This document shows positions 5,034 to 47,302 of a stretch of DNA of 64,000 nt, in pieces. Under the pieces are notes generated by a model. That model had not been told where the DNA came from and did not search any database. It saw only the letters and a list, made by a program, of their open reading frames with translations. The position numbers and the translations under genes were made by a program. The stretch is taken from the sequence record MN988561.1. One strand, given 5' to 3'. Numbering within the stretch: the stretch's first letter is position 1; the number at the start of each line of letters is the position of its first letter.

Positions 5034-5123
5034 GGAGAGGTGCCCGAGTGGTTTAAGGGACTCGTCTACTAAACGAGCGTACGTGAAAGCGTACCATGGG
5101 TTCGAATCCCATCCTCTCTGCCA
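5034..5123 (+). tRNA. tRNA-Ser (anticodon ACU)
   Basis: GGAGAGG/CCTCTCT acceptor, G73-CCA, long variable arm, CTCGT-ctACTaa-ACGAG anticodon arm. Confidence 0.9.
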
Positions 5124-5145
5124 ATTATTAAGAATTGACTTACAT

Positions 5146-5568
5146 ATGTCTATTAGTTTGTATAACTACAAGATCAACGTCATTCGAGTTATCGATGGCG
5201 ATACGATTTATGCAGAAATTGATCTAGGATTCAATATTCGCATCAAAGATTACATTCGATTTGATGGAGTTGATACTCCTGAGACTCGAGGATCAACAGC
5301 TACTGACTTAGGTCAGTGGGCTAAGATGTATACTAGTCTTTGGCTCAGAGGTCTTGAGGGACAATTTGATGAGTTGAAGACTCTGAATCTGGATGAGGCT
5401 TGGTCTAAAGTACCTCGTTCGGATACTGGTCCATGGCTTACTAATCTTTATCTGGATAGTAAGTCATATAATGATCGTGAGAAATACGGTAGGATCCTTG
5501 GATATATCTACCGTAATGAAGCTCTGTCTTTGAATACCAGACTACTCCAAGAAGGTCTCAAGAAATAG
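5146..5568 (+). CDS. thermonuclease (SNase-like) family nuclease
   Basis: RVIDGDT, FDGVDTPE and DREKYGRILG motifs. The ORF-track start at 5083 lies inside the tRNA, so the later Met was used. Confidence 0.85.
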   Translation: MSISLYNYKINVIRVIDGDTIYAEIDLGFNIRIKDYIRFDGVDTPETRGSTATDLGQWAKMYTSLWLRGLEGQFDELKTLNLDEAWSKVPRSDTGPWLTNLYLDSKSYNDREKYGRILGYIYRNEALSLNTRLLQEGLKK

Positions 5569-5661
5569 GAGAACTCTAATGGGTGACGACTCTAGCATCA
5601 TACTTTAACCTGTAGGTTCATACAGAAGAGGACTTCCTCTTTACCTGCAGGTAAGGAGAGT

Positions 5662-5946
5662 ATGATGGATAAGTTCAATCGAGCAGTACGTAGACATCAT
5701 CGTAAACGTCTACGTGAAAATAGAAAGATCTACCACGGAGGACTCCAGTGGGTGATCGATCGTGAGAAAGCTAAGTCTTTCAGAGTAAATACTCCTACGC
5801 CATGTTCATGTCATATGTGTGGCAATCCTCGTAAGTTCTTTAAAGAACTCACAATTCAGGAGCGTAAATTCGCCTTAGATTACGCGAAGTCGAGCTCCAT
5901 TAACCTTCCTTATTGTCAGGAGGAATTGTCCTCCGATGATTTCTGA
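5662..5946 (+). CDS. small basic protein with TPTPCSCxxCGNPR motif
   Basis: AGGAG Shine-Dalgarno, Arg/His-rich N-terminus, Cys cluster. Confidence 0.7.
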   Translation: MMDKFNRAVRRHHRKRLRENRKIYHGGLQWVIDREKAKSFRVNTPTPCSCHMCGNPRKFFKELTIQERKFALDYAKSSSINLPYCQEELSSDDF

Positions 5947-5974
5947 ACCACTGAAAACTTATTCGGTTGGATTC

Positions 5975-6002
5975 AGCGAAGTCAGGGTTGGTTAGCCTTC
6001 CT
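5975..6002 (+). promoter_or_regulatory. bipartite motif copy 2
   Basis: TTC-AGCGAA-gtcagggttggtt-AGCCTTCCT, intergenic, upstream of tRNA-Lys. Confidence 0.6.
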
Positions 6003-6077
6003 TGTTACGAGGTCGAGGTTTTCGATCTTGAAGAATTCGATTTTTAGAGTACAAGTTTATAAAGAATCTCGTAATAT

Positions 6078-6154
6078 GTACGCTTAACTCAGCTGGATAG
6101 AGTAGCGACCTTTTAAGTCGTTGGTCATCGGTTCAAGTCCGATAGCGTACACCA
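6078..6154 (+). tRNA. tRNA-Lys (UUU)
   Basis: Full cloverleaf, ctTTTaa loop, CCA end. Confidence 0.95.
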
Positions 6155-6281
6155 TATTGCATACATTAGAAGACATAGTTTTTAGAGTAAATTTTGAGTG
6201 GTGTGCCTGTACCTATGGTACAGAGTGCTCGGAGATCCTCAGGTAGTTGGCGACTTGAGGATCTCTGCTACACTTTATGAC

Positions 6282-6359
6282 GGTCCTGTACGTTCAATTG
6301 GATAGACGGCTGGATTTCTACTCCGGAGGTTGGGTGTTCGAGTCACTCCAGGATCGCCA
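6282..6359 (+). tRNA. tRNA-Arg (UCU)
   Basis: Full cloverleaf, ttTCTac loop, CCA end. Confidence 0.93.
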
Positions 6360-6377
6360 TAAATTGTAGGTTATATT

Positions 6378-7016
6378 ATGGAATGCCCTTATTGTTCTAA
6401 GCTCTTTAAGAGTGAGAGATCAATGTCTGGACATAAGGGATTCTGTAAATCAGGACCCTATCGTGCAGATACGATTGATCGTAATGCAAAAGCTAAGTTT
6501 AAATTAAGAAAAGTCAGACAACCTAGAGGTGTCGACAAGAGGACTCTTCCTGCGTCTTGTAAATTCTGTGACCGAGAATTTGAAAATCTATTTCAGAAGA
6601 ATGGTCATCAAGTTAGATGTGAGAAGAATCCTAATCCAGCTGAATCGTCAGGTCCAATAGGATATAAACACACTGAAAGTACTCGAAAGAAGCTCTCTGA
6701 CGCTCGAAGAGCCTTCCTTATTGAGAACCCAGATAAGCAATTCTTCAATTATCGTGATTCTAAAGCAGAGCACGATCTTGCTAAGAAATTTGATGAAGTA
6801 GGTATCCTCTACGTAAGACAGTATCGAGGATCTGACTGGAAGAGAGCTTACAAGGCAGACTTCTATCTTCCAGAGTTTAATTACATCATTGAAGTTAATG
6901 GTGAGTTCAAGTATGAGAACGGTAAGCTGCATCAGTATTACCTAAACCGACAGAGATATATTGAATCATTTGGATATAAAGTGATTCAAGTACACGCGTA
7001 TGAAGTGTACGAGTAG
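6378..7016 (+). CDS. putative homing endonuclease (Zn fingers + NUMOD3-like + DUF559/Vsr-like nuclease)
   Basis: CxxC..H..C repeats, KHTESTRKKLS motif, YKADFY...IIEVNG nuclease motif. Confidence 0.7.
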   Translation: MECPYCSKLFKSERSMSGHKGFCKSGPYRADTIDRNAKAKFKLRKVRQPRGVDKRTLPASCKFCDREFENLFQKNGHQVRCEKNPNPAESSGPIGYKHTESTRKKLSDARRAFLIENPDKQFFNYRDSKAEHDLAKKFDEVGILYVRQYRGSDWKRAYKADFYLPEFNYIIEVNGEFKYENGKLHQYYLNRQRYIESFGYKVIQVHAYEVYE

Positions 7017-7023
7017 TTAAAGT

Positions 7024-7201
7024 ACATCTTGGACATAGCTAGTGAGTTGGTTCTTCGTGAGTCATATCGTTTCTCCTTTCGGTATGAGTGTATGACAAGC
7101 TATGAGTTCTGGCATTCTATCTACCTTTAATCCTTTTCTGTAGATAGAATAACGCACGCGTCAAGATGTTATCCTCGAAAGTCAGACAGAGGATCTCAGT
7201 T
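7024..7201 (+). ncRNA. structured RNA motif, copy A (multistem junction plus pseudoknot)
   Basis: P1 7024-32/7161-69, P2 7034-40/7098-104, P3 7114-24/7140-50, AACGCACGCG, P4 7171-76/7189-94. The P4 loop pairs with the junction TCTGGC. Confidence 0.7.
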
Positions 7202-7348
7202 TTATAATCTAGATAACGATATGCCCGATCGTTATGTTCCAGTAAGATCAAGTCTTCCTCCCAGACGTTACTCATTCCCCTCTTGAGTTTATCTTAACGC
7301 ACGCGCTAGATTATAGGTCTCTGAAAACTGGACAGGAGACCATCAGTT
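7202..7348 (+). ncRNA. structured RNA motif, copy B
   Basis: Same architecture with different stem sequences; shares AACGCACGCG, a GAAA-led 12-nt loop and TCAGTT. Confidence 0.7.
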
Positions 7349-7453
7349 CACTAGGGAGTCAGAAGTATGTAATTCCTTGTCTTACCTGGAGGTCACATGC
7401 GGGTGATCTCGGTTACTTTGAGGTTTACTACTTCTGACTCCTGCCGGATTTAT

Positions 7454-7529
7454 TCTAGGTTAGCCAAGTTGGTAAGGCACGAGTTTTTGGTGCTCGCATA
7501 CCTAGGTTCGAACCCTAGACCTAGAACCA
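7454..7529 (+). tRNA. tRNA-Gln (UUG)
   Basis: Cloverleaf, ttTTGgt loop, CCA end. Confidence 0.92.
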
Positions 7530-7574
7530 CTTTTTAGATGTTGATTAAGTTCCGTCTAACAATGAGAGAATACA

Positions 7575-7832
7575 ATGAGTAAAGCATCTGAAGTTATCAA
7601 GAAGCTGAATGAGACTAAACCTTCAGAAGATCTTCTGAAGAGCGAGGTCCAGGAAATTAAGCAGAAGATGATTAATCAAGGCATCGTCAGACCTGACTAT
7701 GCTGTTGAAAGATTTAGTCTGGTTAGTGATAGATTCAGAAATGTCTTGATACACGGTATTGTTCATGGAACAAATACTGCAGGATGGAGAGATCAGATTA
7801 AAGATTTGAGATCTCAGAATTTGATTAGTTAG
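7575..7832 (+). CDS. small protein with MSKA...LNE N-terminal peptide
   Basis: ORF between tRNAs; N-terminus shared with six other ORFs. Confidence 0.7.
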   Translation: MSKASEVIKKLNETKPSEDLLKSEVQEIKQKMINQGIVRPDYAVERFSLVSDRFRNVLIHGIVHGTNTAGWRDQIKDLRSQNLIS

Positions 7833-7906
7833 CGGACGTAACTCAGAGGTAGAGTGCAATCCTTCCAAGTTTGAAGTCGTGGGTTCGATTCCCATCGTCC
7901 GCTCCA
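7832..7906 (+). tRNA. tRNA-Gly (UCC)
   Basis: Cloverleaf, ctTCCaa loop, U73-CCA. Confidence 0.95.
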
Positions 7907-7907
7907 T

Positions 7908-7984
7908 GCATCCTTAGCTCAGTTGGTTAGAGCATCAGTTTTACATACTGAGGGTCACTAGTTCAAGTCTAGTAGGATGTACCA
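7908..7984 (+). tRNA. tRNA-Val (UAC)
   Basis: Cloverleaf, ttTACat loop, CCA end. Confidence 0.95.
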
Positions 7985-8003
7985 GTTATATTAAACTATT
8001 CGT

Positions 8004-8079
8004 GGGAGATTAGTTCAGTGGTTAGAACCGTCAGCTCATAACTGATTAAACAGAGGTTCGAATCCTCTATCTCCTACCA
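8004..8079 (+). tRNA. tRNA with CAU anticodon (elongator Met or Ile2)
   Basis: Cloverleaf, ctCATaa loop, paired 1-72. Met versus Ile2 cannot be resolved by eye. Confidence 0.9.
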
Positions 8080-8082
8080 AGT

Positions 8083-8159
8083 ACCACCTTAACTCAGATG
8101 GATAGAGTACTCGACCGATAATCGAGTTGTCATTGGTTCAAGTCCAATAGGTGGTACCA
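8083..8159 (+). tRNA. tRNA-Ile (GAU)
   Basis: Cloverleaf, ccGATaa loop, CCA end. Confidence 0.93.
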
Positions 8160-8170
8160 ACTTACTTTAT

Positions 8171-8866
8171 GTGAATAAAATGGAATGTCCTTACTGTAAT
8201 AAGATGTTCAAGAATGAAAGATCAATGTCTGGTCATAAAGGTTACTGTAAATCAGGACCTTATAGACTAGAAACAATTGATCGTAATTCTACTGCTAAAT
8301 CAAAATTAAGAAAGCCTAGATCACCTCAAGGTCCTGATAAAAGAACTCTTCCTTCAAAGTGTAAATTTTGTGAGAAGGAATTTGAGACTCTTTACCAGAA
8401 GAATGGTCATCAAGTTTACTGCGAGTCAAATCCTGATAAATCCATTCCATGTGACTGGACAGGAAAATCTCATTCAGATGAGTCTAAGAAGAAGATCGCT
8501 GAGTCTGTAAGTCAGTACTATAAAGAAAATCCTGATAAGGCTTATTATGTTAGATACCATAAGTCCTCAGGTGAGTCTTATGCTGAGAAATACTTCAGAG
8601 AAGTCTTGCCAGGATTAGACTTTATCCAAGAGTATACTGTTGGACCTTATCGTCTGGATTTTGCATTCTTGAATAAGAAGATCGACCTCGAGATTGATGG
8701 TCAATTTCATTACAGAGATCCTCGAACTATCGAGACAGATCGTAAGCGAACTGAGTATCTTCAAAGTCAAGGATGGACTGTGATCAGAGTAAACTGGTCA
8801 GAGTTTAAGAAGTTAAATCTTGAGTCTAGAACTTCTTTTATAGAAGATCTAAAGAGTCAATTATAA
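8171..8866 (+). CDS. putative homing endonuclease (Zn fingers + NUMOD3-like + DUF559)
   Basis: Paralogue of 6378-7016 over the N-terminal ~85 aa; YRLDFA...LEIDGQFH...DRKRTEYLQSQGWTVIRV is DUF559-like. Confidence 0.8.
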   Translation: MNKMECPYCNKMFKNERSMSGHKGYCKSGPYRLETIDRNSTAKSKLRKPRSPQGPDKRTLPSKCKFCEKEFETLYQKNGHQVYCESNPDKSIPCDWTGKSHSDESKKKIAESVSQYYKENPDKAYYVRYHKSSGESYAEKYFREVLPGLDFIQEYTVGPYRLDFAFLNKKIDLEIDGQFHYRDPRTIETDRKRTEYLQSQGWTVIRVNWSEFKKLNLESRTSFIEDLKSQL

Positions 8867-8942
8867 CGCAGGGTATTTCAGTGGTCAGAAGGCGAGATTC
8901 ATAACCTCGAGGTCATCGGTTCGAATCCGATCCCTGCAACCA
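8867..8942 (+). tRNA. tRNA-fMet-like (CAU)
   Basis: C1:A72 mismatch typical of initiators. The anticodon stem lacks the canonical three G-C pairs. Confidence 0.85.
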
Positions 8943-9208
8943 GTTTCAGTTAACGGAGCCAGCGTATCTAGACTATAACATCTATCTCACAGATGTCTAG
9001 ATCGTAGTGAGTTTGAGCGTAGCCTTATGGTATCGTTCTGGCTGCACCGTTTCATATATGCGGTCCTGAGATGGGATAGGACTCTATCTGAGTGCACAAG
9101 GATAGATGCACCTAAGCGGTCTCTGCGATGAGATCCACCGCTCCATAATCTGTAATCTTGATGTGAACAGTGTCGTAGATATCTCATCAGTAATATCGAG
9201 TTAATGAG

Positions 9209-9709
9209 ATGATGTATATCCGATACGCTTTATACTTACCAGTTAATCTACTACTTGTACTGTCAGCATATGTGTTCTCACCTATTCTAGCAGCACTTTC
9301 TCTAATTACAGGTCCGACGCTCCCTGGAGTACTTCAATGGTTCTCTACTACGGATGACAATCTAGACGGTGGAATTCATCAGAATGTCTCAGGCTATAAG
9401 TCTGGACTGAAAGGATTCTCACTATGGTGGCAACGTACATGTTGGATCTGCAGAAATCCTGCTCATGGATGGCAGTCTAACTTACTAGGTATGTCTGTTG
9501 ATGGATTCGAATTTATCGAGAAGATCGATATTTCTACTCCTAAATGGTATCTGATGAAGAATAATAAGCATACGTTCTTCATGTGGAAGAAGGATCAACC
9601 ACTCTTCTCCAAGTATTATCTGAAACTATGGTTCGGATGGCTGAATACTGCATATGATGGTAAGAATCATCATTATGAATTTCAGATCGGACTGAAGAGT
9701 AAAAATTAA
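9209..9709 (+). CDS. hypothetical membrane-anchored protein
   Basis: N-terminal hydrophobic helix; Trp-rich WFSTTDDNLDG and WICRNPAHGW motifs. Confidence 0.75.
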   Translation: MMYIRYALYLPVNLLLVLSAYVFSPILAALSLITGPTLPGVLQWFSTTDDNLDGGIHQNVSGYKSGLKGFSLWWQRTCWICRNPAHGWQSNLLGMSVDGFEFIEKIDISTPKWYLMKNNKHTFFMWKKDQPLFSKYYLKLWFGWLNTAYDGKNHHYEFQIGLKSKN

Positions 9710-9719
9710 TATAGGTTAA

Positions 9720-9797
9720 GTCGCTATGACGGAGTGGTCCAACGTAATGGTCTGCAAAACCATATAACCGCTGGTTCGAATCCAGCTAGCGACTCCA
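9720..9797 (+). tRNA. tRNA-Cys (GCA)
   Basis: Cloverleaf, ctGCAaa loop, U73-CCA. Confidence 0.92.
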
Positions 9798-9807
9798 AGG
9801 TTAAACT

Positions 9808-9918
9808 ATGAAGTATGTAATCATTCTAGGATTGCTTCTAGCAGGGTGTAAAACTGCTGAAGAGCGTTACTACTCAGATTTGTCTACAGGTGTAGGCATA
9901 GTTCTAAAGGATAAATAA
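9808..9918 (+). CDS. small lipoprotein (36 aa; not in ORF track)
   Basis: Translates MKYVIILGLLLAGCKTAEERYYSDLSTGVGIVLKDK; canonical lipobox LAGC. Confidence 0.6.
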   Translation: MKYVIILGLLLAGCKTAEERYYSDLSTGVGIVLKDK

Positions 9919-10035
9919 ATGTCAACTATTATTGTTGCAGTTGTAGCATTCATTGCAGGTGGATACGCTAGTAAGAATTTTGGATTCGATCTAGTTGAGT
10001 ATGCCAAGGCTGCTTATAACAAGTTTAAGGCATAA
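9919..10035 (+). CDS. small single-TM protein (38 aa; not in ORF track)
   Basis: [38 protein letters not shown]; starts immediately after the lipoprotein stop codon. Confidence 0.55.
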
Positions 10036-10044
10036 TGCCTTTGT

Positions 10045-10121
10045 CGGAGCGTAGCGCAGCCAGGTAGCGCAATAGTTTTGGGTACTATGGGTCGTCTGTT
10101 CGAATCAGACCGTTCCGACCA
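10045..10121 (+). tRNA. tRNA-Pro (UGG)
   Basis: Cloverleaf, ttTGGgt loop, CCA end. Confidence 0.95.
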
Positions 10122-10123
10122 AT

Positions 10124-10200
10124 ATTCCCTTGGACAAGCGGTTTAAGTCATCTCACTTTCACTGAGAAGATCACGGGTTCAAATCCCGTAGGGAATACCA
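10124..10200 (+). tRNA. tRNA-Glu (UUC)
   Basis: Cloverleaf, ctTTCac loop, CCA end. Confidence 0.93.
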
Positions 10201-10205
10201 ATTTC

Positions 10206-10233
10206 AGCGAAGTTAGGCTCTTGTAGCCTTCCT
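10206..10233 (+). promoter_or_regulatory. bipartite motif copy 3
   Basis: TTC-AGCGAA-gttaggctcttgt-AGCCTTCCT, intergenic. Confidence 0.6.
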
Positions 10234-10298
10234 TCTTGTATCGGTTAGTAGTGTCAATCCGAGCTATTAATGTGAGTATTAAGTATCGGATTCTATGA

Positions 10299-10395
10299 TC
10301 GAGAGTGGTGGAACGGTAGACACATCCAGATAAAAGAGCAGTTTCTGGACGCTACTTAAATATGCGTGCTAGTTCAAGTCTAGCCTCTCGAACCA
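10299..10395 (+). tRNA. Leu-type tRNA with aberrant 15-nt anticodon loop (identity undetermined)
   Basis: TCGAGAG/CTCTCGA acceptor, A73-CCA, Leu-type D arm, long variable arm and normal T arm. The anticodon stem TCCAG/CTGGA closes ATAAAAGAGCAGTTT. Confidence 0.7.
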
Positions 10396-10429
10396 ATATT
10401 ATATGCTCATTCTTAGATAGGGATTACCA

Positions 10430-11191
10430 ATGGGTAAATTACATGAAATCCTCGCGGTTGAAGGTGACCTCGTAGGTGTAGCCAAGAAAGTTACTGAAGA
10501 AGCTATCGCTACGTTCAGCAAGCGTGCAGATCACTTCAGTGAGACTACTACTGAACAGAAATACTTTGCAGACGATGAGCAGCATCTCAATACGTCTGAA
10601 TCCAAGGCAATGGTGACCACTGTACCTGACAAGCTCAAGTACATTGTTGATCCTATTGCTAAGTTCTTCGATGCGTATTACTCGAAGGAAGCTACCAATC
10701 AGATCGCTAAGGCTGATGTAGAAGTCAAGGGTACGACGATCTTTGCAGATGTTCCAGCAACGGTTCTCCTAGGTATGGAGACTAAGCTTCGTGAACTCCG
10801 TAAGGTCTATGAATCGATTCCGACTCTCGCTCCTGGTGTATTCTGGGAGAAGGATGTTAATCGTCCGGCAGGTGTATACCGTGCTCGTGAACCTGAAGTC
10901 CGATTCGTTACGAAGAAGACTGTACGTCCGATCACTCTTTCACCTGCTACTGACAAGCATCCTGCTCAGATTGAGAAGGTCAATGAAGATCTTCCTGTCG
11001 CTAAGAAGACGATTACTACCTGGAGTAGTATGATGTCGTCAGCTGACAAGAGCAAGGTTCTCGAACGTATCGATACTCTGATCCGTGCAGTTAAGACTGC
11101 TCGTCAGCGTGCAAATGGTACTGAGGCAGTATCTGCTTCATCCTTCGGTGATAAGATTTTCGACTTTATCCATCAAGGTATCGTCGACTAA
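10430..11191 (+). CDS. conserved uncharacterised coiled-coil protein (KLHEILAVE / ATDKHPAQ family)
   Basis: 253 aa ORF with SD. It resembles, from memory and unverified, a widespread hypothetical family of bacteria and phages. Confidence 0.8.
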   Translation: MGKLHEILAVEGDLVGVAKKVTEEAIATFSKRADHFSETTTEQKYFADDEQHLNTSESKAMVTTVPDKLKYIVDPIAKFFDAYYSKEATNQIAKADVEVKGTTIFADVPATVLLGMETKLRELRKVYESIPTLAPGVFWEKDVNRPAGVYRAREPEVRFVTKKTVRPITLSPATDKHPAQIEKVNEDLPVAKKTITTWSSMMSSADKSKVLERIDTLIRAVKTARQRANGTEAVSASSFGDKIFDFIHQGIVD

Positions 11192-11349
11192 GAATTGAAT
11201 GTTGAGGCTACCAGCATAGCCTCCATTCTCCGACTCCCATAGGGACAAACTCAGCCTTAAACTTATTGTGAGTATCAAGAATTTATCTTCTGCTCAAGAT
11301 AAACAAACTAGCTTTGTATCCCTAAAACTTAGACAAGATTTACCAGATC

Positions 11350-11494
11350 CAGTCGCAGCATATCTCTATTTTCCCGGAAGGTCGTGAGTTCGAGTCTCAT
11401 CACCGCACCCAATTACCTACAATTGGACTGATGCGGTGTAGCTCAGTGGTAGAGCGTTCGTTTTATCTTGAAGATATTCTGTCGATGATGACTG
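11350..11494 (+). ncRNA. circularly permuted tRNA-like RNA
   Basis: T arm 11384-11400, then acceptor 3-prime strand CACCGCA-C-CCA, a 20-nt linker, acceptor 5-prime strand TGCGGTG and D arm; closed by CAGCATATCT/AGATATTCTG and CAGTC/GACTG. Confidence 0.8.
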
Positions 11495-11645
11495 TATGAA
11501 TCTATCGTAACGATTAAATATGCTCCGCGATAGGAGTGTATGTTACATTAACAAGAACAGGGTGGTTCCATGCGGAATGTGGTTCCACCCACCTCTTCTT
11601 ATATAAGATCATTCGGATTTTATATAATAAGAATTTGAGGTTTAC

Positions 11646-11933
11646 ATGAGTAAGGCATCAAAATTACTTAGCAAGATCAATGAATTGGACGGTGGATCTA
11701 AGGACCCTCTGGTTCAATCAGGTTGTGCTAAGATTGTAGCTTATTGTCAGAAGAAGAGTCTTAGTGCTGCTGAGATTGAGCAGATTAAGGATCAGATTCT
11801 TGACGATGAGCCTCTTCACAATCATACTGCAGATACACTAGCTGCAATCGGTCTTGATATGAATATCAAGTCTGAGCTTGTAGCGATTGGTCTCAGTAGT
11901 GATGAAGCTGATGCGATTATGAATGTAACCTAA
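11646..11933 (+). CDS. small protein with MSKA...INE N-terminal peptide
   Basis: GAGG SD; shared N-terminal motif. Confidence 0.75.
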   Translation: MSKASKLLSKINELDGGSKDPLVQSGCAKIVAYCQKKSLSAAEIEQIKDQILDDEPLHNHTADTLAAIGLDMNIKSELVAIGLSSDEADAIMNVT

Positions 11934-11940
11934 CAGACAT

Positions 11941-12014
11941 GCTCCTATAGTTAAGTGGTATAACTTCGCCTTTGTAACGCGAGTTCCTCAGTTCGATTCT
12001 GGGTGGGAGCACCA
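11941..12014 (+). tRNA. tRNA-Thr (UGU)
   Basis: Cloverleaf, ttTGTaa loop (one mismatch in the anticodon stem), CCA end. Confidence 0.9.
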
Positions 12015-12066
12015 TGATTTCTTGAATCCTAACTCATAGTGAGTTAGAGATAACAAGGAAGATAAA

Positions 12067-12363
12067 ATGAGTGATGAAGTTAATAAGACTGTCGTAACTA
12101 GAGAAGAACATCGAGGTACTGCTTGTAAGTACTATGATACTCGTGGTAAAGCATACGATGCTATTATCACTGAAGTATGGGGACCTCAATGCGTCAACCT
12201 TGTCTATGTCAATGATGTAGAAGGTCAGAAAGATTCTTATGGTCAGAAATTGATCAGATCATGTTCTGTGATGCATGGTAGTGTTCAGCAAGCTCATGGC
12301 AACTATTGGATGTTACCAGGAGAGACTCGAGTTTCTAAATATGTTCATGATTCAGCTATTTAA
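12067..12363 (+). CDS. hypothetical protein (98 aa)
   Basis: ORF with AAGGA SD. Confidence 0.75.
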   Translation: MSDEVNKTVVTREEHRGTACKYYDTRGKAYDAIITEVWGPQCVNLVYVNDVEGQKDSYGQKLIRSCSVMHGSVQQAHGNYWMLPGETRVSKYVHDSAI

Positions 12364-12437
12364 TTAACTTCTGTGATCTTCCGACCTTGACGCGACGAAG
12401 TAGCAGATAACTCCATCTTCCATAATTGTTATCACGT

Positions 12438-12513
12438 GGGACCGTAGCTCAGATGGGAGAGCGTCTGATTTGCATTCAGAAGGTCATCGGTTCGATCCCG
12501 ATCGGCTCCACCA
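12438..12513 (+). tRNA. tRNA-Ala (UGC)
   Basis: Cloverleaf, G3:U70, ttTGCat loop, CCA end. Confidence 0.95.
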
Positions 12514-12523
12514 CTTTTTATAT

Positions 12524-12606
12524 GCTCCTCCGAAAGGTGGATCCTTGATCTCTCTGAGGTAATACTCTGTCCTGGATCTAGTAGTTAATAGCTACTGGGA
12601 GCGCCA
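12524..12606 (+). ncRNA. degenerate tRNA-like element (acceptor + T-like arm + CCA)
   Basis: GCTCCT/GGGAGC stem ending G-CCA and an AGTAG-ttaatag-CTACT hairpin; no recognisable D or anticodon arm. Confidence 0.35.
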
Positions 12607-12658
12607 CATTAGGTCGTATCAACCTGAGGTTAACCGTAGTTACTCAAACTGATACAAT

Positions 12659-12745
12659 GGGATTTCAGACGTGTTGGAGTGCGATCGGCAGACTGTAAAT
12701 CTGTCCTCTTAGAGCTACTAGGTTCGAATCCTAGAAGTCCCACCA
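12659..12745 (+). tRNA. tRNA-Tyr (GUA)
   Basis: GCAGA-ctGTAaa-TCTGT, long variable arm, CCA end; divergent D arm. Confidence 0.88.
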
Positions 12746-12750
12746 TATTT

Positions 12751-12792
12751 ATAGCCTCATATCGGAGCAATCTGGTATGAGGCTATTTCTTT
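12751..12792 (+). terminator. intrinsic terminator
   Basis: 16-bp stem followed by TTCTTT. Confidence 0.65.
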
Positions 12793-12866
12793 CATGTTAA
12801 AGAGAGGAGCGATGTATTATGATCGTTACGACATCTTCTAGGTAAAACAACCTAGGAGTATAAAGC

Positions 12867-13169
12867 ATGAAGTCGCATTATATTAAGTCTGAGAAGTTTC
12901 GTTGGAATCGAGACGATAAGATCGAATATATTTACAAGCTCAGAGCTGGTAATTATTACCGTGATCTTAAGACCTTTCAGGAGATCTCTGCGAATGAGTT
13001 CGTTAAGTTTGATCCTGACTGTATCGAGTATAAGATTCCTCCTCGTTATGGACGACTTAATCATTACTTGAACAAGTGGAATCTTGAGAGATTTCCTTCT
13101 AAGTCTTATAAGAAGTCTTGGAAGTTTGCTCACAGATGCCGTAAGCAATGGATGATCAATCTTGAATAA
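12867..13169 (+). CDS. small basic protein (KSWK...RKQW C-terminus)
   Basis: AGGAG SD; 100 aa. Confidence 0.7.
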   Translation: MKSHYIKSEKFRWNRDDKIEYIYKLRAGNYYRDLKTFQEISANEFVKFDPDCIEYKIPPRYGRLNHYLNKWNLERFPSKSYKKSWKFAHRCRKQWMINLE

Positions 13170-13347
13170 GATGACATTCGATGATTGGTGTGATCAGGTC
13201 GATACTGTAGCGAGTAAAGCTATGGGAGGACCTGAATCATACACTAAGGCCACTGGCAGAGAATGCTGGATGGATATGTATAACGATGGATTCACTCCTG
13301 AAGATGCATGGACTGAAGAGTCTTTATGTATTCAGGAGTCCCTTTAA
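13162..13347 (+). CDS. small acidic hypothetical protein
   Basis: Coupled to the upstream ORF; 61 aa. Confidence 0.6.
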   Translation: MNKMTFDDWCDQVDTVASKAMGGPESYTKATGRECWMDMYNDGFTPEDAWTEESLCIQESL

Positions 13348-13365
13348 TTCTAGATGGATAAGTTA

Positions 13366-13509
13366 ATGAATTTTCTCGGTAAAATCTTTTCTGCAGATTC
13401 TAAGAAGCTGGATGACGCGAAGGCTCTTCTTGCAGAAGTAACTGCATCGAAGAATCGTATCATCAATAATGATCTTAAGGGTCGTATTGAGACTTTCTTG
13501 AGTGCATGA
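13366..13509 (+). CDS. small hypothetical protein (47 aa; not in ORF track)
   Basis: MNFLGKIFSADSKKLDDAKALLAEVTASKNRIINNDLKGRIETFLSA. Confidence 0.5.
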   Translation: MNFLGKIFSADSKKLDDAKALLAEVTASKNRIINNDLKGRIETFLSA

Positions 13510-13548
13510 GATAGAAGGCTAAAAGACGCGAATTATTCGCCTAGATTG

Positions 13549-13576
13549 AGCGAACTTAGCGTCTGATAGCCTTCCT
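13549..13576 (+). promoter_or_regulatory. bipartite motif copy 4
   Basis: AGCGAA-cttagcgtctgat-AGCCTTCCT; ends 17 nt upstream of tRNA-Asn. Confidence 0.6.
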
Positions 13577-13593
13577 TCTTTGTCAGACGGTGA

Positions 13594-13669
13594 TGGCTAG
13601 TAGCTCAGTTGGTAGAGCATTGCACTGTTAATGCGACGGTCGTAGGTTCGAGCCCTACCTAGTCAGCCA
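13594..13669 (+). tRNA. tRNA-Asn (GUU)
   Basis: Cloverleaf, ctGTTaa loop, G73-CCA. Confidence 0.95.
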
Positions 13670-13692
13670 GTCTGCTTATAAAGGATTCTTAG

Positions 13693-13899
13693 ATGGAACG
13701 TGTATATAGTTTAGTTTATGTTGCTATCATTACAGCAGGTGTAGTCGCAGGTATCACAGCACTCACTCTACCTTTGTACTATGGTACGATTGATAGTAAT
13801 CGTAAACAATCTGAGTTGTCAAGTAAGTGTGTTGACTCAGGAGGGTCCTGGATCGTAGGTCCTAATGGATACTACCAGTGTATTGCTGGTCGTAAGTAA
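13693..13899 (+). CDS. small membrane protein
   Basis: N-terminal TM helix and a C-terminal Cys pair. Confidence 0.65.
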   Translation: MERVYSLVYVAIITAGVVAGITALTLPLYYGTIDSNRKQSELSSKCVDSGGSWIVGPNGYYQCIAGRK

Positions 13900-13908
13900 T
13901 GTGAATAA

Positions 13909-14000
13909 GGATAGTTGGCTGAGTCTGGTCTAAGGCGCTCGACTTGAAATCGAGAGGACGTGAGAGCGTTCCGTGGGTTCGAATCCTACACTATCCGCCA
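13909..14000 (+). tRNA. tRNA-Ser (UGA)
   Basis: Cloverleaf, ctTGAaa loop, long variable arm, G73-CCA. Confidence 0.95.
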
Positions 14001-14018
14001 TATTTATTATTGAGTATA

Positions 14019-14405
14019 ATGGATCAAATAGTAAAGAAAAAGAGGACTAGACGTCCTGTTTCTTTAGAGACTAGAATGAAATTATCTGCTGCTCTTAAGG
14101 GTAAACCTCAGAGTAAAGTTTCTAATGAAGAGATTTTTGCAGATAATACTACTCATCCTAGACATCGTATTAAAGAAAGAATAATTCGAGATAATCTTAT
14201 TCCATACGAGTGTGCAATCTGTGAAAATGATGGTACATGGAATGGTGAACCTTTATCTTTACATCTAGACCATGAAAATGGTAAGAATAATGATAATCGT
14301 CTTGAGAATCTTAGATTCTTATGTCCTAACTGTCATAGTCAAACAGATACTTATGCAGGTAAGAATAAGAAACGTAAGAGAATCAAGAGAGAAGAGCGTG
14401 TTTAG
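14019..14405 (+). CDS. HNH homing endonuclease
   Basis: CAIC...LHLDHENGKNNDNRLENLRFLCPNCHSQT. The start was moved out of the tRNA to the Met at 14019. Confidence 0.9.
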   Translation: MDQIVKKKRTRRPVSLETRMKLSAALKGKPQSKVSNEEIFADNTTHPRHRIKERIIRDNLIPYECAICENDGTWNGEPLSLHLDHENGKNNDNRLENLRFLCPNCHSQTDTYAGKNKKRKRIKREERV

Positions 14406-14469
14406 TTCAATGGTAGAATGCGAGTCTCCAAAACTTGATATGAGAGTTCGATTCTCTCAGCACGTGCCA
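14396..14469 (+). tRNA. tRNA-Trp (CCA)
   Basis: Cloverleaf, ctCCAaa loop, G73-CCA; overlaps the last codons of the HNH gene. Confidence 0.92.
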
Positions 14470-14505
14470 ATTCTAGATATTAAATAAACACTTGGATAAG
14501 AAGAA

Positions 14506-15150
14506 ATGTCAAAAGCAAGAGATTTACTTAATACCTTGAATGAAGCTGATGATTGGAATATTCACAAGAAAGAGTTGAAGAAGGCTGGATTTGATCTCCA
14601 TCCTAATCATCACGCTAATGTGAATATCAATCGTAACAACTATCCTCAGAATCGTGATATCTATACGGGTAAAATGAGTAATGGTCATACGATGGTTATT
14701 ACTCAATTAACTCCGATTGATATGGATCGATACGCATCTGTTAAGGATGCTTCTGGTAAATTTATCAAGCACTACTACGTAGCTCCTGTTAAACCTACAC
14801 TGAGTAAAAGTCCTGTATTAAAGTCTACAGCGATCGGTAATGATCCTAAGACAGTACTTGAAGAAATCAAAGCAGCTATGAGAATGGTTCCAGAAGGACG
14901 TCAGGCTACCTTTAGATCTGTTGAACAGAATGGTAAGTACTATGAGTTCGATGTCAGATACTGGGGAAGCTGGGAAGTTCCTGATGGTGAAGACGATGAT
15001 GGAGACTACGACTTTGAAGTCTTGACATCTAAATCGTCTAAGTCACTTCAGAACATTGTTGAGCCTATCATTAAGAAATATCCAAGTCTAGATATCTACT
15101 ATCAAACTGGAGAGAAGAATTATATTACTGTTCATGCTACTGTAAAGTAG
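14506..15150 (+). CDS. hypothetical protein with MSKA...LNE N-terminal peptide
   Basis: 214 aa ORF; shared N-terminal motif. Confidence 0.8.
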   Translation: MSKARDLLNTLNEADDWNIHKKELKKAGFDLHPNHHANVNINRNNYPQNRDIYTGKMSNGHTMVITQLTPIDMDRYASVKDASGKFIKHYYVAPVKPTLSKSPVLKSTAIGNDPKTVLEEIKAAMRMVPEGRQATFRSVEQNGKYYEFDVRYWGSWEVPDGEDDDGDYDFEVLTSKSSKSLQNIVEPIIKKYPSLDIYYQTGEKNYITVHATVK

Positions 15151-15160
15151 TTGACAGTAT

Positions 15161-15245
15161 GTCGGTATGGCGGAATTGGTAGACGCCCTGGTTTTAGGTA
15201 CCAGTGTCGAAAGACGTGTAGGTTCGAGTCCTATTACCGACACCA
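15161..15245 (+). tRNA. tRNA-Leu (UAG)
   Basis: Cloverleaf, ttTAGgt loop, long variable arm, CCA end. Confidence 0.95.
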
Positions 15246-15251
15246 AATTAT

Positions 15252-15386
15252 GACTTGATGTTGCGAAAGAAATGGTTACTTCGTATTCCAAACGAGAAAT
15301 GTAGGTATCGAATCCTGCTATCCTAATAGGATATCGTCTAAGATAGGACGCTAAAATTTCCATTTCTGACACTATCTCATCAAGTC
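15252..15386 (+). ncRNA. Y-RNA-like unit 1 (permuted tRNA module)
   Basis: GACTTGATG/CATCAAGTC stem, GTTGCGA...ATCTC, TTACTTCG; T arm precedes TATCC/GGATA acceptor and D arm. Confidence 0.8.
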
Positions 15387-15394
15387 TCATATTC

Positions 15395-15477
15395 AGATCT
15401 TGACGTTGCGACTAGTATCGGATACTTCGCTTTGGTTGCTAAAAACTCCGATGCAATATACTATCTCGTCAAGATCT
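15395..15477 (+). ncRNA. Y-RNA-like unit 2 (no tRNA module)
   Basis: AGATCTTGACG/CGTCAAGATCT stem, GTTGCGA...ATCTC, TACTTCG, short loop. Confidence 0.75.
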
Positions 15478-15487
15478 TTCAGTTTAT

Positions 15488-15632
15488 CCTAACGTTGCGA
15501 ATTAAACAGTTACTTCGATATCAAGCAGAAGGTCAATGGTTCGAATCCATTCATGCGACACGCGTTGCATGTAGCTCAGTTGGTTAGAGCGTCCGCCACC
15601 ACAAGATCTGTTTAAGTCATTATCTCGTTAGG
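15488..15632 (+). ncRNA. Y-RNA-like unit 3 (permuted tRNA module)
   Basis: CCTAACG/CGTTAGG stem; T arm AATGG-TTCGAAT-CCATT, looped acceptor CATGCGA/TTGCATG, D arm TAGCTCAGTTGGTTAGAGC. Confidence 0.85.
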
Positions 15633-15641
15633 TCCTTATAA

Positions 15642-15786
15642 CCTAGTGTTGCGATCGGTACAACTTCATCGCATTGTAAGCCCTGTGTCATTGGTTCAAA
15701 TCCAATTCCTCCGTCCATCTATCGGAGGATAGCTCAGTCTGGTAGAGCAAGGAAAGTATGTTGTATCAATATACCATCTCACTAGG
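15642..15786 (+). ncRNA. Y-RNA-like unit 4 (permuted tRNA module, internal CCA)
   Basis: CCTAGTG/CACTAGG stem; T arm, TCCTCCG-T-CCA, CGGAGGA, D arm. Confidence 0.85.
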
Positions 15787-15924
15787 ATCCTTATCTCATC
15801 CACCAACCTCGGTGTAAGAGTGGAAAGAGTTACGTGATCGTATGAGAATACGATCACAGTCATTTAGGTCATGTACCATGTGTACAAGGATCATTCGAAG
15901 GTGCTCGTCATCTTCAGCAAATAA

Positions 15925-16068
15925 TGTAGAGTTGCGAATATATCAAGTTCATCGCTTACCATATACCAAGCGGGTAGCTCAGTGGTTAGAGCACTAGGAT
16001 GTAACAGTCGTAGAGGTCGTCGGTTCGAATCCGACTCTAACTTCTTGATATAGACTTATCTCTCTACA
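15925..16068 (+). ncRNA. Y-RNA-like unit 5 (D arm before T arm)
   Basis: TGTAGAG/CTCTACA stem, GTTGCGA...ATCTC; the tRNA arms are in normal order and the acceptor pairs poorly. Confidence 0.8.
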
Positions 16069-16077
16069 ACTTTTATA

Positions 16078-16212
16078 TGTACTGTTGCGACTAATACGGT
16101 TACTTCGTTGCAAATGAAACATAGGTTCGAATCCTATCCAGAGGATTGTCGTAAGATGACATCTGGCTGAGCATTGGTGAGCTCATCTCCGTATTAACTA
16201 CATCTCAGTACA
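16078..16212 (+). ncRNA. Y-RNA-like unit 6 (permuted tRNA module)
   Basis: TGTACTG/CAGTACA stem; ATAGG-TTCGAAT-CCTAT, CCAGA/TCTGG, GAGC/GCTC D arm. Confidence 0.85.
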
Positions 16213-16222
16213 ATTACAATTC

Positions 16223-16379
16223 GTACCGTTGCGAATGATATGAATACATCGCTGTAGAACCGACGTCGTAAGACATGCTAGTTCAAGTCTAGCTCTCCGT
16301 CCCAATACTATGACGGAGATGGTGAAATTGGTAGACACATCGGTAGATAAATCTTCATATCGGCTTACAATCTCGGTAT
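16223..16379 (+). ncRNA. Y-RNA-like unit 7 (near-complete permuted Leu-type tRNA)
   Basis: GTACCG/CGGTAT stem; CTGTAGA-ACCGA, long variable arm, T arm, TCTCCGT-C-CCA, ACGGAGA, Leu-type D arm, TCGGT. Confidence 0.85.
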
Positions 16380-16388
16380 ATCTTAGAC

Positions 16389-16413
16389 GCTATGTTGCGA
16401 TAGTCCTCATAGC
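16389..16413 (+). promoter_or_regulatory. mini GTTGCGA hairpin in the Ro60 gene leader
   Basis: GCTATG-TTGCGA-TAGTCCT-CATAGC; ends 20 nt before the ATG. Confidence 0.5.
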
Positions 16414-16433
16414 ATTATCATAGGGAAAATGTC

Positions 16434-18002: not shown

Positions 18003-18050
18003 GTAGTGAGAATTGGGAGTGAAATACCTCCCAATTCCATTTATCTAAAT

Positions 18051-18134
18051 GCCCACTTGATGGAATTGGTAGACATAAGGCACTTAAAATGCCTAGCTTA
18101 ATGCGTACCGGTTCGAGTCCGGTAGTGGGTACCA
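18051..18134 (+). tRNA. tRNA-Leu (UAA)
   Basis: Cloverleaf, ctTAAaa loop, CCA end. Confidence 0.95.
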
Positions 18135-45314: not shown

Positions 45315-45584
45315 TTAAAATATTTTATGACACCATCGTAGANNNNNNNNNNNNNNNNNNNTACCAAGATGAACTTCGATAGCTAGATCCGGATTGATTT
45401 CGTTGATGCGAGTAACCTTGTCTAAAAGCTTACCTTCAACAACGTGAATCTGGTAAATCGACGGATCGAACTTAAGTTTTAATTGATCTACAATTTTGAC
45501 TACTTCGTCGTATTCGACGTAGCCATTTTTAGATACTCCACGATAATTCTCATAATGACCAGGACTGATGGCAATAACCTTCAT
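45315..45584 (-). CDS. N-acetylmuramoyl-L-alanine amidase (Amidase_3), interrupted by an assembly gap
   Basis: IAISPGH..E..LAIEVHL Zn-binding motifs; N-run at 45343-45361. Confidence 0.7.
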   Translation of the reverse strand: MKVIAISPGHYENYRGVSKNGYVEYDEVVKIVDQLKLKFDPSIYQIHVVEGKLLDKVTRINEINPDLAIEVHLGXXXXXXXLRWCHKIF

Positions 45585-45593
45585 TTTATATCT

Positions 45594-46219: not shown

Positions 46220-46238
46220 NNNNNNNNNNNNNNNNNNN

Positions 46239-46450
46239 GTTGCCAGAAGCATACGAATCTTCGAACCACTTAATTTGTTATCCTGAGGATCAACAATTAA
46301 ATCTGTAAGATCGATGTTAGGATACTTTCTGGATGAATGCAATTTGAGGATAACCATGATAGCTACCACAAGAACTACAACGAGACTGAATGCTCGCTCT
46401 GACATCCACCCAGAGATGTCATGAATTAAATTGAATAGTGCGTCATCCAT
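46239..46450 (-). CDS. membrane protein (holin-like), N-terminal part
   Basis: TM helix and DLTDLIVDPQDNKLSGSK; truncated by an N-run. Confidence 0.45.
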
Positions 46451-46458
46451 AATAGTTC

Positions 46459-47238: not shown

Positions 47239-47302
47239 GGAATAATCCTTAAGGAGACATTAGAGAGGTCACAAGAATGTGACCTCTCCCTCGTCAATTC
47301 AA

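What the first reader, a model, noticed from the sequence alone, without database searches (positions are those of the whole stretch)
7024..7348. Tandem copies of an unrecognised pseudoknotted RNA with compensatory base changes
SEEN: two adjacent units (7024-7201 and 7202-7348) with almost unrelated stem sequences but identical architecture: P1-P2-[GTTCYRGY]-P3-[AACGCACGCG]-P1', then hairpin P4 with a 12-nt loop, then TCAGTT. The P4 loop pairs 6 bp with the junction: TCTGGC with GTCAGA in copy A and TCCAGT with ACTGGA in copy B, so the pseudoknot covaries between copies. I do not recognise it as hammerhead, twister, pistol, HDV/theta or glmS ribozyme, or as a common riboswitch. INFERENCE: a new ribozyme or ligand/protein-binding RNA class. 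Its position inside a tRNA operon would suit a self-cleaving processing element.
Basis: partly seen in the sequence, partly recalled or inferred. Interest (0 to 1): 0.85.

Follow-up and report, generated by a model that had tools for sequence, protein, structure and literature searches.

The report
Tandem pseudoknotted RNAs in phage tRNA operon
Two adjacent, strongly diverged copies of a compactly folded non-coding RNA sit inside the tRNA gene cluster of a Rhizobium phage; they match no known RNA family, I found them in no other virus or bacterium, and their function is unknown.

Summary
Units A (7024-7201) and B (7203-7348) share one architecture. P1 encloses hairpins P2 and P3. The junctions GUUCYRGY and AACGCACGCG are invariant. 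A 3' hairpin P4 has a 12-nt loop, GAAA-NNNN-GACA, that pairs 6 bp with the first junction.

All 32 modelled pairs form in both copies, and 19 differ on both sides. The pseudoknot is the only non-nested 6-bp interaction conserved in both copies.

The window is a Cuauhnahuacvirus (Rhizobium phage RHph_TM30 group). Rfam 15 gives nothing, even at E<=10. A covariance model finds only these two copies in the whole 207-kb genome.

So this is a real structured RNA with no known family, but the evidence rests on two paralogues in one phage genus. Ribozyme or ligand binding is untested.

New here: four of the five peripheral loops are pyrimidine-only (for example UCCUCCC and UUUCUCCUUU). They resemble the anti-Shine-Dalgarno loops of rhizobial sRNAs.

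My best guess (0.38) is a pair of stable trans-acting RNAs cut out of the tRNA precursor, with a conserved partner-binding core and variable CU-rich arms. A new self-cleaving ribozyme remains possible (about 0.2).

The parts
7024..7201 (+). Unit A, whole module (178 nt)
   Evidence: CM hit 60 bits
7024..7032 (+). A P1 5' strand (pairs with 7161-7169; 9 bp including G7032.U7161)
7034..7104 (+). A P2 hairpin: base 7034-7039/7099-7104, 59-nt extension, apical loop 7070-7079 UUUCUCCUUU (pyrimidine-only)
7105..7113 (+). A J2/3 AGUUCUGGC; 7108-7113 is the pseudoknot 5' strand
7114..7150 (+). A P3 hairpin (11 bp), loop 7125-7139 CUUUAAUCCUUUUCU (13 of 15 pyrimidines)
7151..7160 (+). A J3/1 AACGCACGCG (invariant)
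   Evidence: the only two occurrences in the window
7161..7169 (+). A P1 3' strand
7171..7194 (+). A P4 hairpin (6 bp), 12-nt loop GAAAGUCAGACA; 7181-7186 is the pseudoknot 3' strand
7195..7201 (+). A tail CUCAGUU, single-stranded linker to unit B (possible AG/UU RNase E-type site; inference)
7203..7348 (+). Unit B, whole module (146 nt)
   Evidence: CM hit 97.8 bits
7203..7212 (+). B P1 5' strand (pairs with 7306-7315; 10 bp)
7213..7235 (+). B P2 hairpin (8 bp, loop AUGCCCG)
7236..7243 (+). B J2/3 GUUCCAGU; 7238-7243 is the pseudoknot 5' strand
7244..7295 (+). B P3: base 7244-7248/7291-7295 enclosing hairpin a (7252-7255/7263-7266, loop UCCUCCC) and hairpin b (7270-7274/7284-7288, loop UUCCCCUCU). 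The base helix is the least certain.
   Evidence: The only polymorphism among sequenced relatives (7269 T>C in TM30) lies unpaired here.
7296..7305 (+). B J3/1 AACGCACGCG (invariant)
7306..7315 (+). B P1 3' strand
7316..7341 (+). B P4 hairpin (7 bp including U7322.G7335), loop GAAAACUGGACA; 7327-7332 is the pseudoknot 3' strand
7342..7348 (+). B tail AUCAGUU
7354..7442 (+). Third structured element: an 89-nt extended hairpin between unit B and tRNA-Gln. It is not a copy of the motif, but it is part of the same 437-nt non-coding gap.
   Evidence: -46.1 kcal/mol, z = -5.7, 0/200 shuffles; no Rfam hit
6378..7016 (+). Upstream neighbour: homing endonuclease (zf-C2H2 + NUMOD3 + DUF559); its stop codon lies 8 nt before unit A
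7454..7529 (+). Downstream neighbour: tRNA-Gln(UUG)

Best explanation
These are two old, diverged paralogues of a lineage-restricted, compactly folded non-coding RNA.

Shown:
- Each copy is a three-way junction (P1/P2/P3).
- P1 is followed, after 0-1 nt, by hairpin P4.
- The P4 loop locks onto junction J2/3 through a 6-bp pseudoknot.
- About 30 junction and loop nucleotides are invariant, while nearly every helix has been rewritten.
- Four of the five peripheral loops are pyrimidine-only.

Inferred:
- The units are transcribed on the + strand as part of the phage tRNA operon. No promoter or terminator separates them from it.
- Host endonucleases cut them out at the single-stranded AG/UU linkers that precede each module.
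- They accumulate as stable RNAs that act in trans.
- The invariant pseudoknot/junction core is the site recognised by a common partner. A protein is most likely; a small ligand is possible.
- The variable arms display CU-rich, anti-Shine-Dalgarno-like loops able to pair with purine-rich ribosome-binding sites of host or phage mRNAs. This is how the host's own AbcR and NfeR1/cuckoo sRNAs work.
For: - Structure and pseudoknot conserved through compensatory change.
- G.U pairs fix the + strand, the same strand as all the tRNAs.
- No sigma-70-like promoter or intrinsic terminator on the + strand around the units.
- 100% identical in RHph_Y65, while the adjacent endonuclease gene carries 16 substitutions in 305 nt. 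In TM30 the single change lies in an unpaired peripheral position.
- Pyrimidine-only loops UUUCUCCUUU, CUUUAAUCCUUUUCU, UCCUCCC and UUCCCCUCU, against 54% pyrimidine overall. The product of the per-loop probabilities is about 1e-9, though this is a post hoc estimate.
- Other strong hairpins in the cluster do not have such loops.
- Rhizobial trans-acting sRNAs use exactly such loops: the cuckoo motif CCUCCUCCC on hairpins with hypervariable stems (PMC4615179), and tandem AbcR1/AbcR2 and NfeR1 (PMC7143759).
- Narrow phylogenetic distribution and tandem paralogy are typical of sRNAs, not of ribozyme or riboswitch classes.
Against: - No transcript, RNA-end or partner data exist.
- Classical sRNAs carry their own promoter and terminator and rarely have a pseudoknotted core.
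- In sRNA paralogues the seed is usually the conserved part. Here the loops vary and the core is conserved.
- The CU-only loops were noticed post hoc.
- The best phage target match is an 11-nt match of loop B_L3b to the RBS of TM30 gp172. About 0.6 such matches are expected by chance.
- The RNase E-type site is inferred from the enterobacterial consensus, and TCAGTT is a common hexamer.
Confidence: 0.38

Rival explanations
1. A new class of self-cleaving ribozyme. The pseudoknot-locked junction forms an active site that cuts the polycistronic transcript, in J3/1 or at a unit boundary, and separates the endonuclease mRNA from the downstream tRNAs.
For: - Complex fold with about 30 invariant junction and loop nucleotides and a covarying pseudoknot.
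- The topology equals a circularly permuted pistol ribozyme: a hairpin loop pairs 6 bp with the junction between the left shoulders of two stems (PMC4604425).
- Phage tRNA arrays are known to hold HDV-like theta ribozymes (PMC10879173).
- Ribozymes often occur in tandem.
Against: - No Rfam ribozyme family matches, even at E<=10.
- The pistol-defining 2-nt cleavage junction is 10 nt here.
- All known natural self-cleaving classes are widespread, whereas this motif was found in one phage genus only.
- Host RNase P, Z and E suffice for tRNA operon processing.
- The units do not abut a tRNA 3' end.
Confidence: 0.2
2. A cis-acting, non-catalytic RNA element of the operon transcript. It would be a compact fold that blocks exonucleases (RNase J or 3'-exonucleases) or guides endonucleolytic processing. 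That would stabilise the endonuclease mRNA 3' end or the tRNA precursor 5' end, much as tandem three-way-junction/pseudoknot xrRNAs do in flaviviruses.
For: - Position in the 3' UTR of the ORF ending at 7016 and upstream of tRNA-Gln.
- A tandem three-way junction plus pseudoknot architecture.
- A third, very stable hairpin follows directly.
- The tRNA cluster is full of strong hairpins.
Against: - Simple hairpins do this job elsewhere in the same cluster.
- Ten invariant J3/1 nucleotides and CU-only loops are not explained by this reading.
- The second, paralogous endonuclease gene (8171-8866) has no such element after it.
Confidence: 0.14
3. Tandem riboswitch aptamers that sense a metabolite and control read-through into the downstream tRNA genes.
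For: Junction and pseudoknot conservation is aptamer-like. Tandem aptamers are known (glycine, glutamine).
Against: - No expression platform. P4 is not followed by a U-tract in B, and no terminator was predicted.
- The downstream genes are RNAs, not an ORF.
- No Rfam riboswitch match.
- No distribution beyond one genus.
Confidence: 0.05
4. A disguised member of a known family (unusual tRNA, tmRNA piece, group I intron fragment, RNase P-like RNA), or a functionless decaying duplication.
For: - The phage lacks tRNA-Asp, -His and -Phe, and exactly three unassigned structured elements fill this gap.
- Copy A has GAAAGUC, as in RNase P CR-I.
Against: - ARAGORN and the Rfam tRNA, tmRNA, intron and RNase P models give nothing.
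- There is no 7-nt anticodon loop with GUC, GUG or GAA, and no T-arm.
- Neutral decay would not preserve 32/32 pairs with 19 double changes.
Confidence: 0.05

Closest known systems
Pistol self-cleaving ribozyme (Rfam RF02679)
   Same: A hairpin loop forms a 6-bp pseudoknot with the junction joining the left shoulders of two stems. A conserved junction joins the right shoulders. It is found in phages (PMC4604425).
   Different: The hairpin lies 3' rather than 5' of the main stem (a circular permutation). An extra P2 hairpin is present. The right-shoulder junction is 10 nt, not the strictly conserved 2 nt. None of pistol's conserved nucleotides is present, and there is no CM hit.
HDV-like theta ribozymes in phage tRNA arrays (PMC10879173)
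   Same: A pseudoknotted small RNA embedded in a phage tRNA gene cluster.
   Different: Theta ribozymes sit directly 3' of a tRNA and have the nested double-pseudoknot order P1-P2-P3-P3'-P1'-P4-P2'. Here the second pairing partner is inside the P4 loop, and the units follow a protein gene. No Rfam HDV hit.
Rhizobial anti-SD sRNAs: cuckoo/alpha-r14 (NfeR1) and alpha-r15 (AbcR1/AbcR2)
   Same: Same host clade, and a tandem paralogue arrangement like AbcR1/2. The hairpins have hypervariable stems and unpaired CU-rich loops. B_L3a UCCUCCC equals the last 7 nt of the cuckoo motif CCUCCUCCC (PMC4615179, PMC7143759).
   Different: Those sRNAs are simple rows of hairpins with their own promoter and terminator, and the loop motif is the conserved part. 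Here the loops vary, the conserved part is a pseudoknotted junction core, and the genes lie inside a tRNA operon. No Rfam hit to these families.
Stable non-tRNA RNAs of phage tRNA clusters (T4 species 1 and 2 RNAs, rnaC/rnaD; my own knowledge) and the large phage RNAs GOLLD/ROOL that lie next to tRNAs (my own knowledge)
   Same: Structured RNAs of unknown function, co-located and presumably co-processed with phage tRNAs.
   Different: No sequence or structure similarity. No GOLLD or ROOL Rfam hit. The T4 RNAs are extended hairpins, more like the third element at 7354-7442 than like units A and B.
Flavivirus xrRNAs
   Same: Tandem ~70-nt three-way junctions locked by pseudoknots in a 3' UTR.
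   Different: An unrelated sequence and a different pseudoknot partner (5' end/junction and loop/3' flank). The ring topology cannot be assessed here. The host exonucleases differ.

Membership tests
Any Rfam 15 family (4227 models) | Covariance-model score at or near the gathering threshold | tested here: not met
   The only gathering-level hits in the window are tRNAs. At E<=10 on 161-661-nt slices only noise appears (8-16 bits against thresholds of 39-100).
Pistol ribozyme | P1 hairpin 5' of P2/P3, with its loop pairing to the P2-P3 left-shoulder junction | tested here: not met
   The loop-junction pseudoknot exists, but the hairpin is 3' of the enclosing stem. The topology matches only after circular permutation.
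Pistol ribozyme | [quoted passage not shown] | tested here: not met
   The junction is the 10-nt AACGCACGCG in both copies; criterion from PMC4604425.
Pistol or any self-cleaving ribozyme | Site-specific self-cleavage | not testable with these tools
   Needs an in vitro transcription and cleavage assay.
HDV-like / theta ribozyme | Nested double pseudoknot P1-P2-P3-P3'-P1'-P4-P2', placed directly 3' of a tRNA | tested here: not met
   The helix order is P1-P2-P2'-PK-P3-P3'-P1'-P4-PK'-P4'. The upstream neighbour is an ORF. No Rfam hit.
Hammerhead ribozyme | Three-way junction with CUGANGA, GAAA and UH core strands | tested here: not met
   The junction strands are 0-1 nt, (A)GUUCYRGY and AACGCACGCG.
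tRNA / tmRNA | Cloverleaf or tRNA-like domain detectable by ARAGORN or Rfam | tested here: not met
   no hit in 7017-7453.
Cuckoo / alpha-r14 sRNA | 2-4 adjacent hairpins (at least 6 bp, loops 9-27 nt), each carrying CCUCCUCCC | tested here: not met
   One loop, UCCUCCC, sits on a 4-bp stem. Three other loops are CU-only but not the motif. The hairpins are arms of a junction, not a row. The resemblance is functional, not membership.
Anti-SD trans-acting sRNA (functional kind) | Unpaired CU-rich loops complementary to SD sequences | tested here: met
   CUCCU, CCUCC, CCCCUCU and AUCCUUU lie in loops. Phage RBSs are mostly AGGA/GGAG-type.
Anti-SD trans-acting sRNA (functional kind) | Demonstrated target pairing and regulation | not testable with these tools
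   Only an 11-nt match to one phage RBS was found, at the chance level. The host genome is not at hand.
Riboswitch | Aptamer followed by an expression platform controlling a downstream ORF | tested here: not met
   No terminator or SD-sequestering helix. The downstream genes are RNAs.
   The CM finds 2 hits in the window and 0 in the rest of the genome and in related loci. Pattern scans returned chance matches only.

The most novel reading that the evidence does not exclude
Units A and B are the founding members of a previously undescribed catalytic or ligand/protein-binding RNA fold. It would be a pseudoknot-locked three-way junction with a pistol-like but permuted topology. One reading is a new self-cleaving ribozyme class that processes a phage tRNA-operon transcript.
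Probability: 0.2. Interest if true: 0.85.

Novelty: categorically new. Interest (0 to 1): 0.6.

Why it matters
If the fold is functional, it adds a new structured RNA to the short list of non-tRNA RNAs carried in phage tRNA operons. Those RNAs have stayed unexplained since the T4 species 1 and 2 RNAs were found.

If it is a ribozyme, it would be a new natural class. If it is a trans-acting RNA with anti-SD arms, it would show a phage copying its host's own sRNA logic to reprogramme translation. It would do so from inside a tRNA precursor rather than from a separate sRNA gene.

Either way it is small (a core of about 110 nt) and internally controlled by two diverged copies. It also comes from phages that grow on laboratory Rhizobium strains, so it is directly testable.

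The main limit is that all the evidence comes from one phage genus.

Tried and rejected
**Rfam.** I ran gathering thresholds on the whole window, then E<=10 on 6900-7560, 7017-7205, 7195-7355 and 7340-7460. Nothing came up.

**BLAST.** blastn (word size 11) of 6900-7560 against 50,697 phage records returned only the ten near-identical Cuauhnahuacvirus genomes, plus a tRNA-Gln match in IG49.

**Covariance model R1.** I built it from trimmed cores. It finds only A and B in the window. It finds nothing in:
- the remaining 145 kb of RHph_TM30;
- the IG49 and RHph_TM16 regions;
- three IMG/VR relatives of the 253-aa neighbouring protein;
- any pattern-derived locus.

**Exact-core pattern scans.** There were eight of viral contigs (plus the protein-guided), one of metagenome contigs and one of genome contigs.
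- All hits failed checks for P4, P3, P1 or pseudoknot complementarity.
- The metagenome scan stopped at 120 rows. One recurrent human-gut sequence took 36 of them.

**Protein-guided retrieval.**
- The 85-aa ORF has no homologue at all.
- The endonuclease has homologues only within the genus, plus one remote ENA protein.
- DUF7338 homologues in other Rhizobium phages are not in tRNA clusters.

**Ideas considered and dropped.**
- Hidden tRNA-Asp, -His or -Phe: no anticodon loop or T-arm.
- Group I intron housing the endonuclease: only 18 nt lie upstream of the ORF, and there is no Rfam hit.
- RNase P-like core: the GAAAGUC match occurs in copy A only.
- tmRNA D-loop resemblance: copy A only.
- Type III antitoxin repeats: wrong unit size, and no toxin gene.
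- Pairing of the TCAGTT tail or of J3/1 with other parts of the unit: nothing covaries.
- A partner for AACGCACGCG elsewhere in the phage: no match longer than 8 nt.

Full report
**Where we are.** The window is 99-100% identical to the Rhizobium phages of the RHph_TM30/Y65 group (Kleczkowskaviridae, genus Cuauhnahuacvirus, about 207 kb).
- The finding lies in a tRNA cluster of 20 tRNA genes, all on the + strand, between 5034 and 18134.
- It fills most of a 437-nt unannotated gap (7017-7453).
- Upstream is a homing-endonuclease gene (6378-7016; zf-C2H2 + NUMOD3 + DUF559). Downstream is tRNA-Gln (7454-7529).
- No sigma-70-type promoter or intrinsic terminator is predicted on the + strand around the gap. 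Co-transcription with the tRNAs is therefore the natural inference.

Reading the sequence base by base gives, for both units, the same order of elements:
- P1 5' strand, hairpin P2, junction (A)GUUCYRGY, hairpin P3, junction AACGCACGCG, P1 3' strand;
- then, after 0-1 nt, hairpin P4 with a 12-nt loop GAAA-NNNN-GACA;
- then N-UCAGUU.

The last six bases of J2/3 pair with positions 5-10 of the P4 loop: UCUGGC with GUCAGA in A, and UCCAGU with ACUGGA in B. Exact coordinates are in the parts list.

Four independent checks support this model.
- Single-sequence MFE folding finds P1, P3 and P4 in A, and P1, P2 and P4 in B.
- RNAalifold on the core alignment finds P1-P4.
- The full model costs 1.5 kcal/mol (B) and 4.2 kcal/mol (A) more than the nested MFE. 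That is before adding the pseudoknot helices, worth -7 and -6 kcal/mol.
- Three G.U pairs and no A.C mismatch put the RNA on the + strand.

**More than chance.**
- On the gapless 112-column core alignment, 32 of 32 pairs form in both copies. Nineteen changed on both sides. Sliding the 3' partners by 1-3 columns leaves 34-44% paired and 1-2 double changes.
- Of all 4851 antiparallel 6-column window pairs, only eight pair in both copies. Every one belongs to P1, P2, P4 or the pseudoknot. Column shuffles give 0.21 on average. The pseudoknot is thus the single non-nested interaction shared by the two copies.
- AACGCACGCG occurs nowhere else in the window.

Caveats:
- There are only two sequences, and I trimmed the alignment to the helices.
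- P3 of unit B is the weakest helix.
- TCAGTT is a common hexamer, with 65 occurrences.

**Not a known family.**
- Rfam 15 returns only tRNAs at gathering level.
- At E<=10 on slices of 121-661 nt it returns only noise.
- ARAGORN sees no tRNA or tmRNA here.
- The topology is that of a circularly permuted pistol ribozyme. However, pistol's defining 2-nt cleavage junction (PMC4604425) is 10 nt here, and no conserved pistol nucleotide is present.
- The helix order is not that of HDV-like or theta ribozymes.
- The junction strands are not those of a hammerhead.

**Not found anywhere else.**
- A covariance model of the two cores scores 97.8 and 60 bits on B and A. It finds nothing else in the window or in the other 145 kb of the RHph_TM30 genome.
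- It also finds nothing in regions of the Rhizobium phages IG49 and TM16, or in three IMG/VR contigs that encode relatives of a neighbouring protein.
- Seven pattern scans of about 11 Gb of viral contigs each required a different subset of the invariant blocks. They gave only matches lacking P4, P3, P1 or pseudoknot complementarity.
- A genome scan of 185,579 species gave five chance hits.
- The 85-aa ORF next door has no homologue, and the endonuclease has none outside the genus, in a library of 5.8 billion proteins.
- The phage lineage is therefore isolated, and the RNA is so far genus-specific.
- Within the genus the RNA region is invariant, while the adjacent endonuclease gene differs at 16 of 305 positions in Y65. 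The one change in TM30 (7269 T>C) falls in an unpaired peripheral position.

Four of the five peripheral hairpin loops are made only, or almost only, of pyrimidines:
- A_L2 UUUCUCCUUU;
- A_L3 CUUUAAUCCUUUUCU (13 of 15);
- B_L3a UCCUCCC;
- B_L3b UUCCCCUCU.

The region as a whole is 54% pyrimidine, and other strong hairpins of the cluster lack such loops. These loops contain CUCCU, CCUCC and AUCCU, the complements of GGAG/AGGA-type ribosome-binding sites, which the phage itself uses.

The host's own trans-acting sRNAs work through exactly such loops:
- the cuckoo family carries CCUCCUCCC on hairpins with hypervariable stems (PMC4615179);
- AbcR1 and AbcR2 are tandem paralogues, and NfeR1 has three redundant anti-SD loops (PMC7143759).

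The resemblance is functional only, because the membership criteria of those families are not met. A search for targets inside the phage found one 11-nt match of B_L3b to the RBS of TM30 gp172, which is at the chance level.

**What it most likely is.**
- Shown: a real, doubly represented, pseudoknot-locked three-way-junction RNA with an invariant core and variable CU-looped arms, on the tRNA strand.
- Inferred: it is released from the tRNA-operon precursor and acts in trans. Single-stranded AG/UU linkers precede unit A, unit B and the third hairpin. The core would be the site for a common partner, and the arms would be able to pair with purine-rich RBSs. Confidence is 0.38.
- The conserved-core/variable-loop pattern is the reverse of ordinary sRNA paralogues. 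That is why a partner-binding or catalytic core must be part of any explanation.
- Rivals: a new self-cleaving ribozyme (0.2), a cis stability or processing element (0.14), a riboswitch (0.05), and a disguised known RNA or junk (0.05).
- The narrow distribution argues against a ribozyme or riboswitch class, all of which are widespread. It fits a fast-evolving phage regulatory RNA.

**Verdict.**
The RNA is structured, pseudoknotted and unrecognised. 'Class' and 'ribozyme' are unproven.
- By the tests available it belongs to no known RNA family, so I rate it categorically new as a fold.
- The explicit reservation is that the evidence is two paralogues in one phage genus and that no function has been shown.

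Noticed in passing
window 7354-7442 (+): A third, very stable extended hairpin (89 nt, -46 kcal/mol, z = -5.7) fills the rest of the gap before tRNA-Gln. Its stem strands contain GUCAGA and UCUGAC, the same hexamers as (or one base from) unit A's pseudoknot strands. No Rfam match.
   Followed up: partly
window 5034-18134 and the whole RHph_TM30 genome (L023-L026): The phage encodes 20 tRNAs but none for Asp, His or Phe anywhere in its 207 kb. A tRNA-like sequence at 15973-16037 scores only 33.9 bits and lacks a proper acceptor stem.
   Followed up: partly
window 5034-5123 (+): tRNA-Ser with the unusual anticodon ACU (A34). Its 3' part is overlapped by the start of an SNase-like ORF as listed mechanically (5083-5568).
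   Followed up: no
window 6378-7016 and 8171-8866 (+): Two paralogous homing endonucleases (zf-C2H2 + NUMOD3 + DUF559/Vsr-like) are inserted between tRNA genes. In RHph_Y65 the 5' part of the first one has been replaced and the protein is 169 aa.
   Followed up: partly
window 12751-12786, 13508-13580, 11560-11640 (+): Other very strong hairpins lie in the gaps of the tRNA cluster. One is a perfect 16-bp hairpin followed by UUUCUUUC directly after tRNA-Tyr, which looks like a terminator. None shares the motif.
   Followed up: partly
L024 17453-17463 (RHph_TM30 62453-62463): An 11-nt perfect complement (AAGAGGGGAAU) of loop B_L3b sits on the ribosome-binding site of gp172, 4 nt before its ATG. 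About 0.6 such matches are expected by chance in the genome.
   Followed up: partly
L023 10623-11873 (RHph_TM30): A gene annotated as a PurA-type ('2-aminooxy') adenylosuccinate synthetase. This could be a PurZ-like enzyme and hint at modified (2-aminoadenine) DNA in this phage.
   Followed up: no
window 45343-60450: Nine short runs of N (10-69 bases) interrupt the structural-gene region. They look like masked stretches rather than biology.
   Followed up: no
L027, L034, L039 and 33 other metagenome loci: A recurrent sequence in metagenome contigs, several of them labelled human gut (AACGCACGCGAGGCTTTCTTCGCGTGCGTT...GAAATTTTGACAGATCAGTT), matched the search pattern. It contains a 10-bp inverted repeat of the AACGCACGCG block but none of the motif's helices, so it is unrelated.
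   Followed up: no
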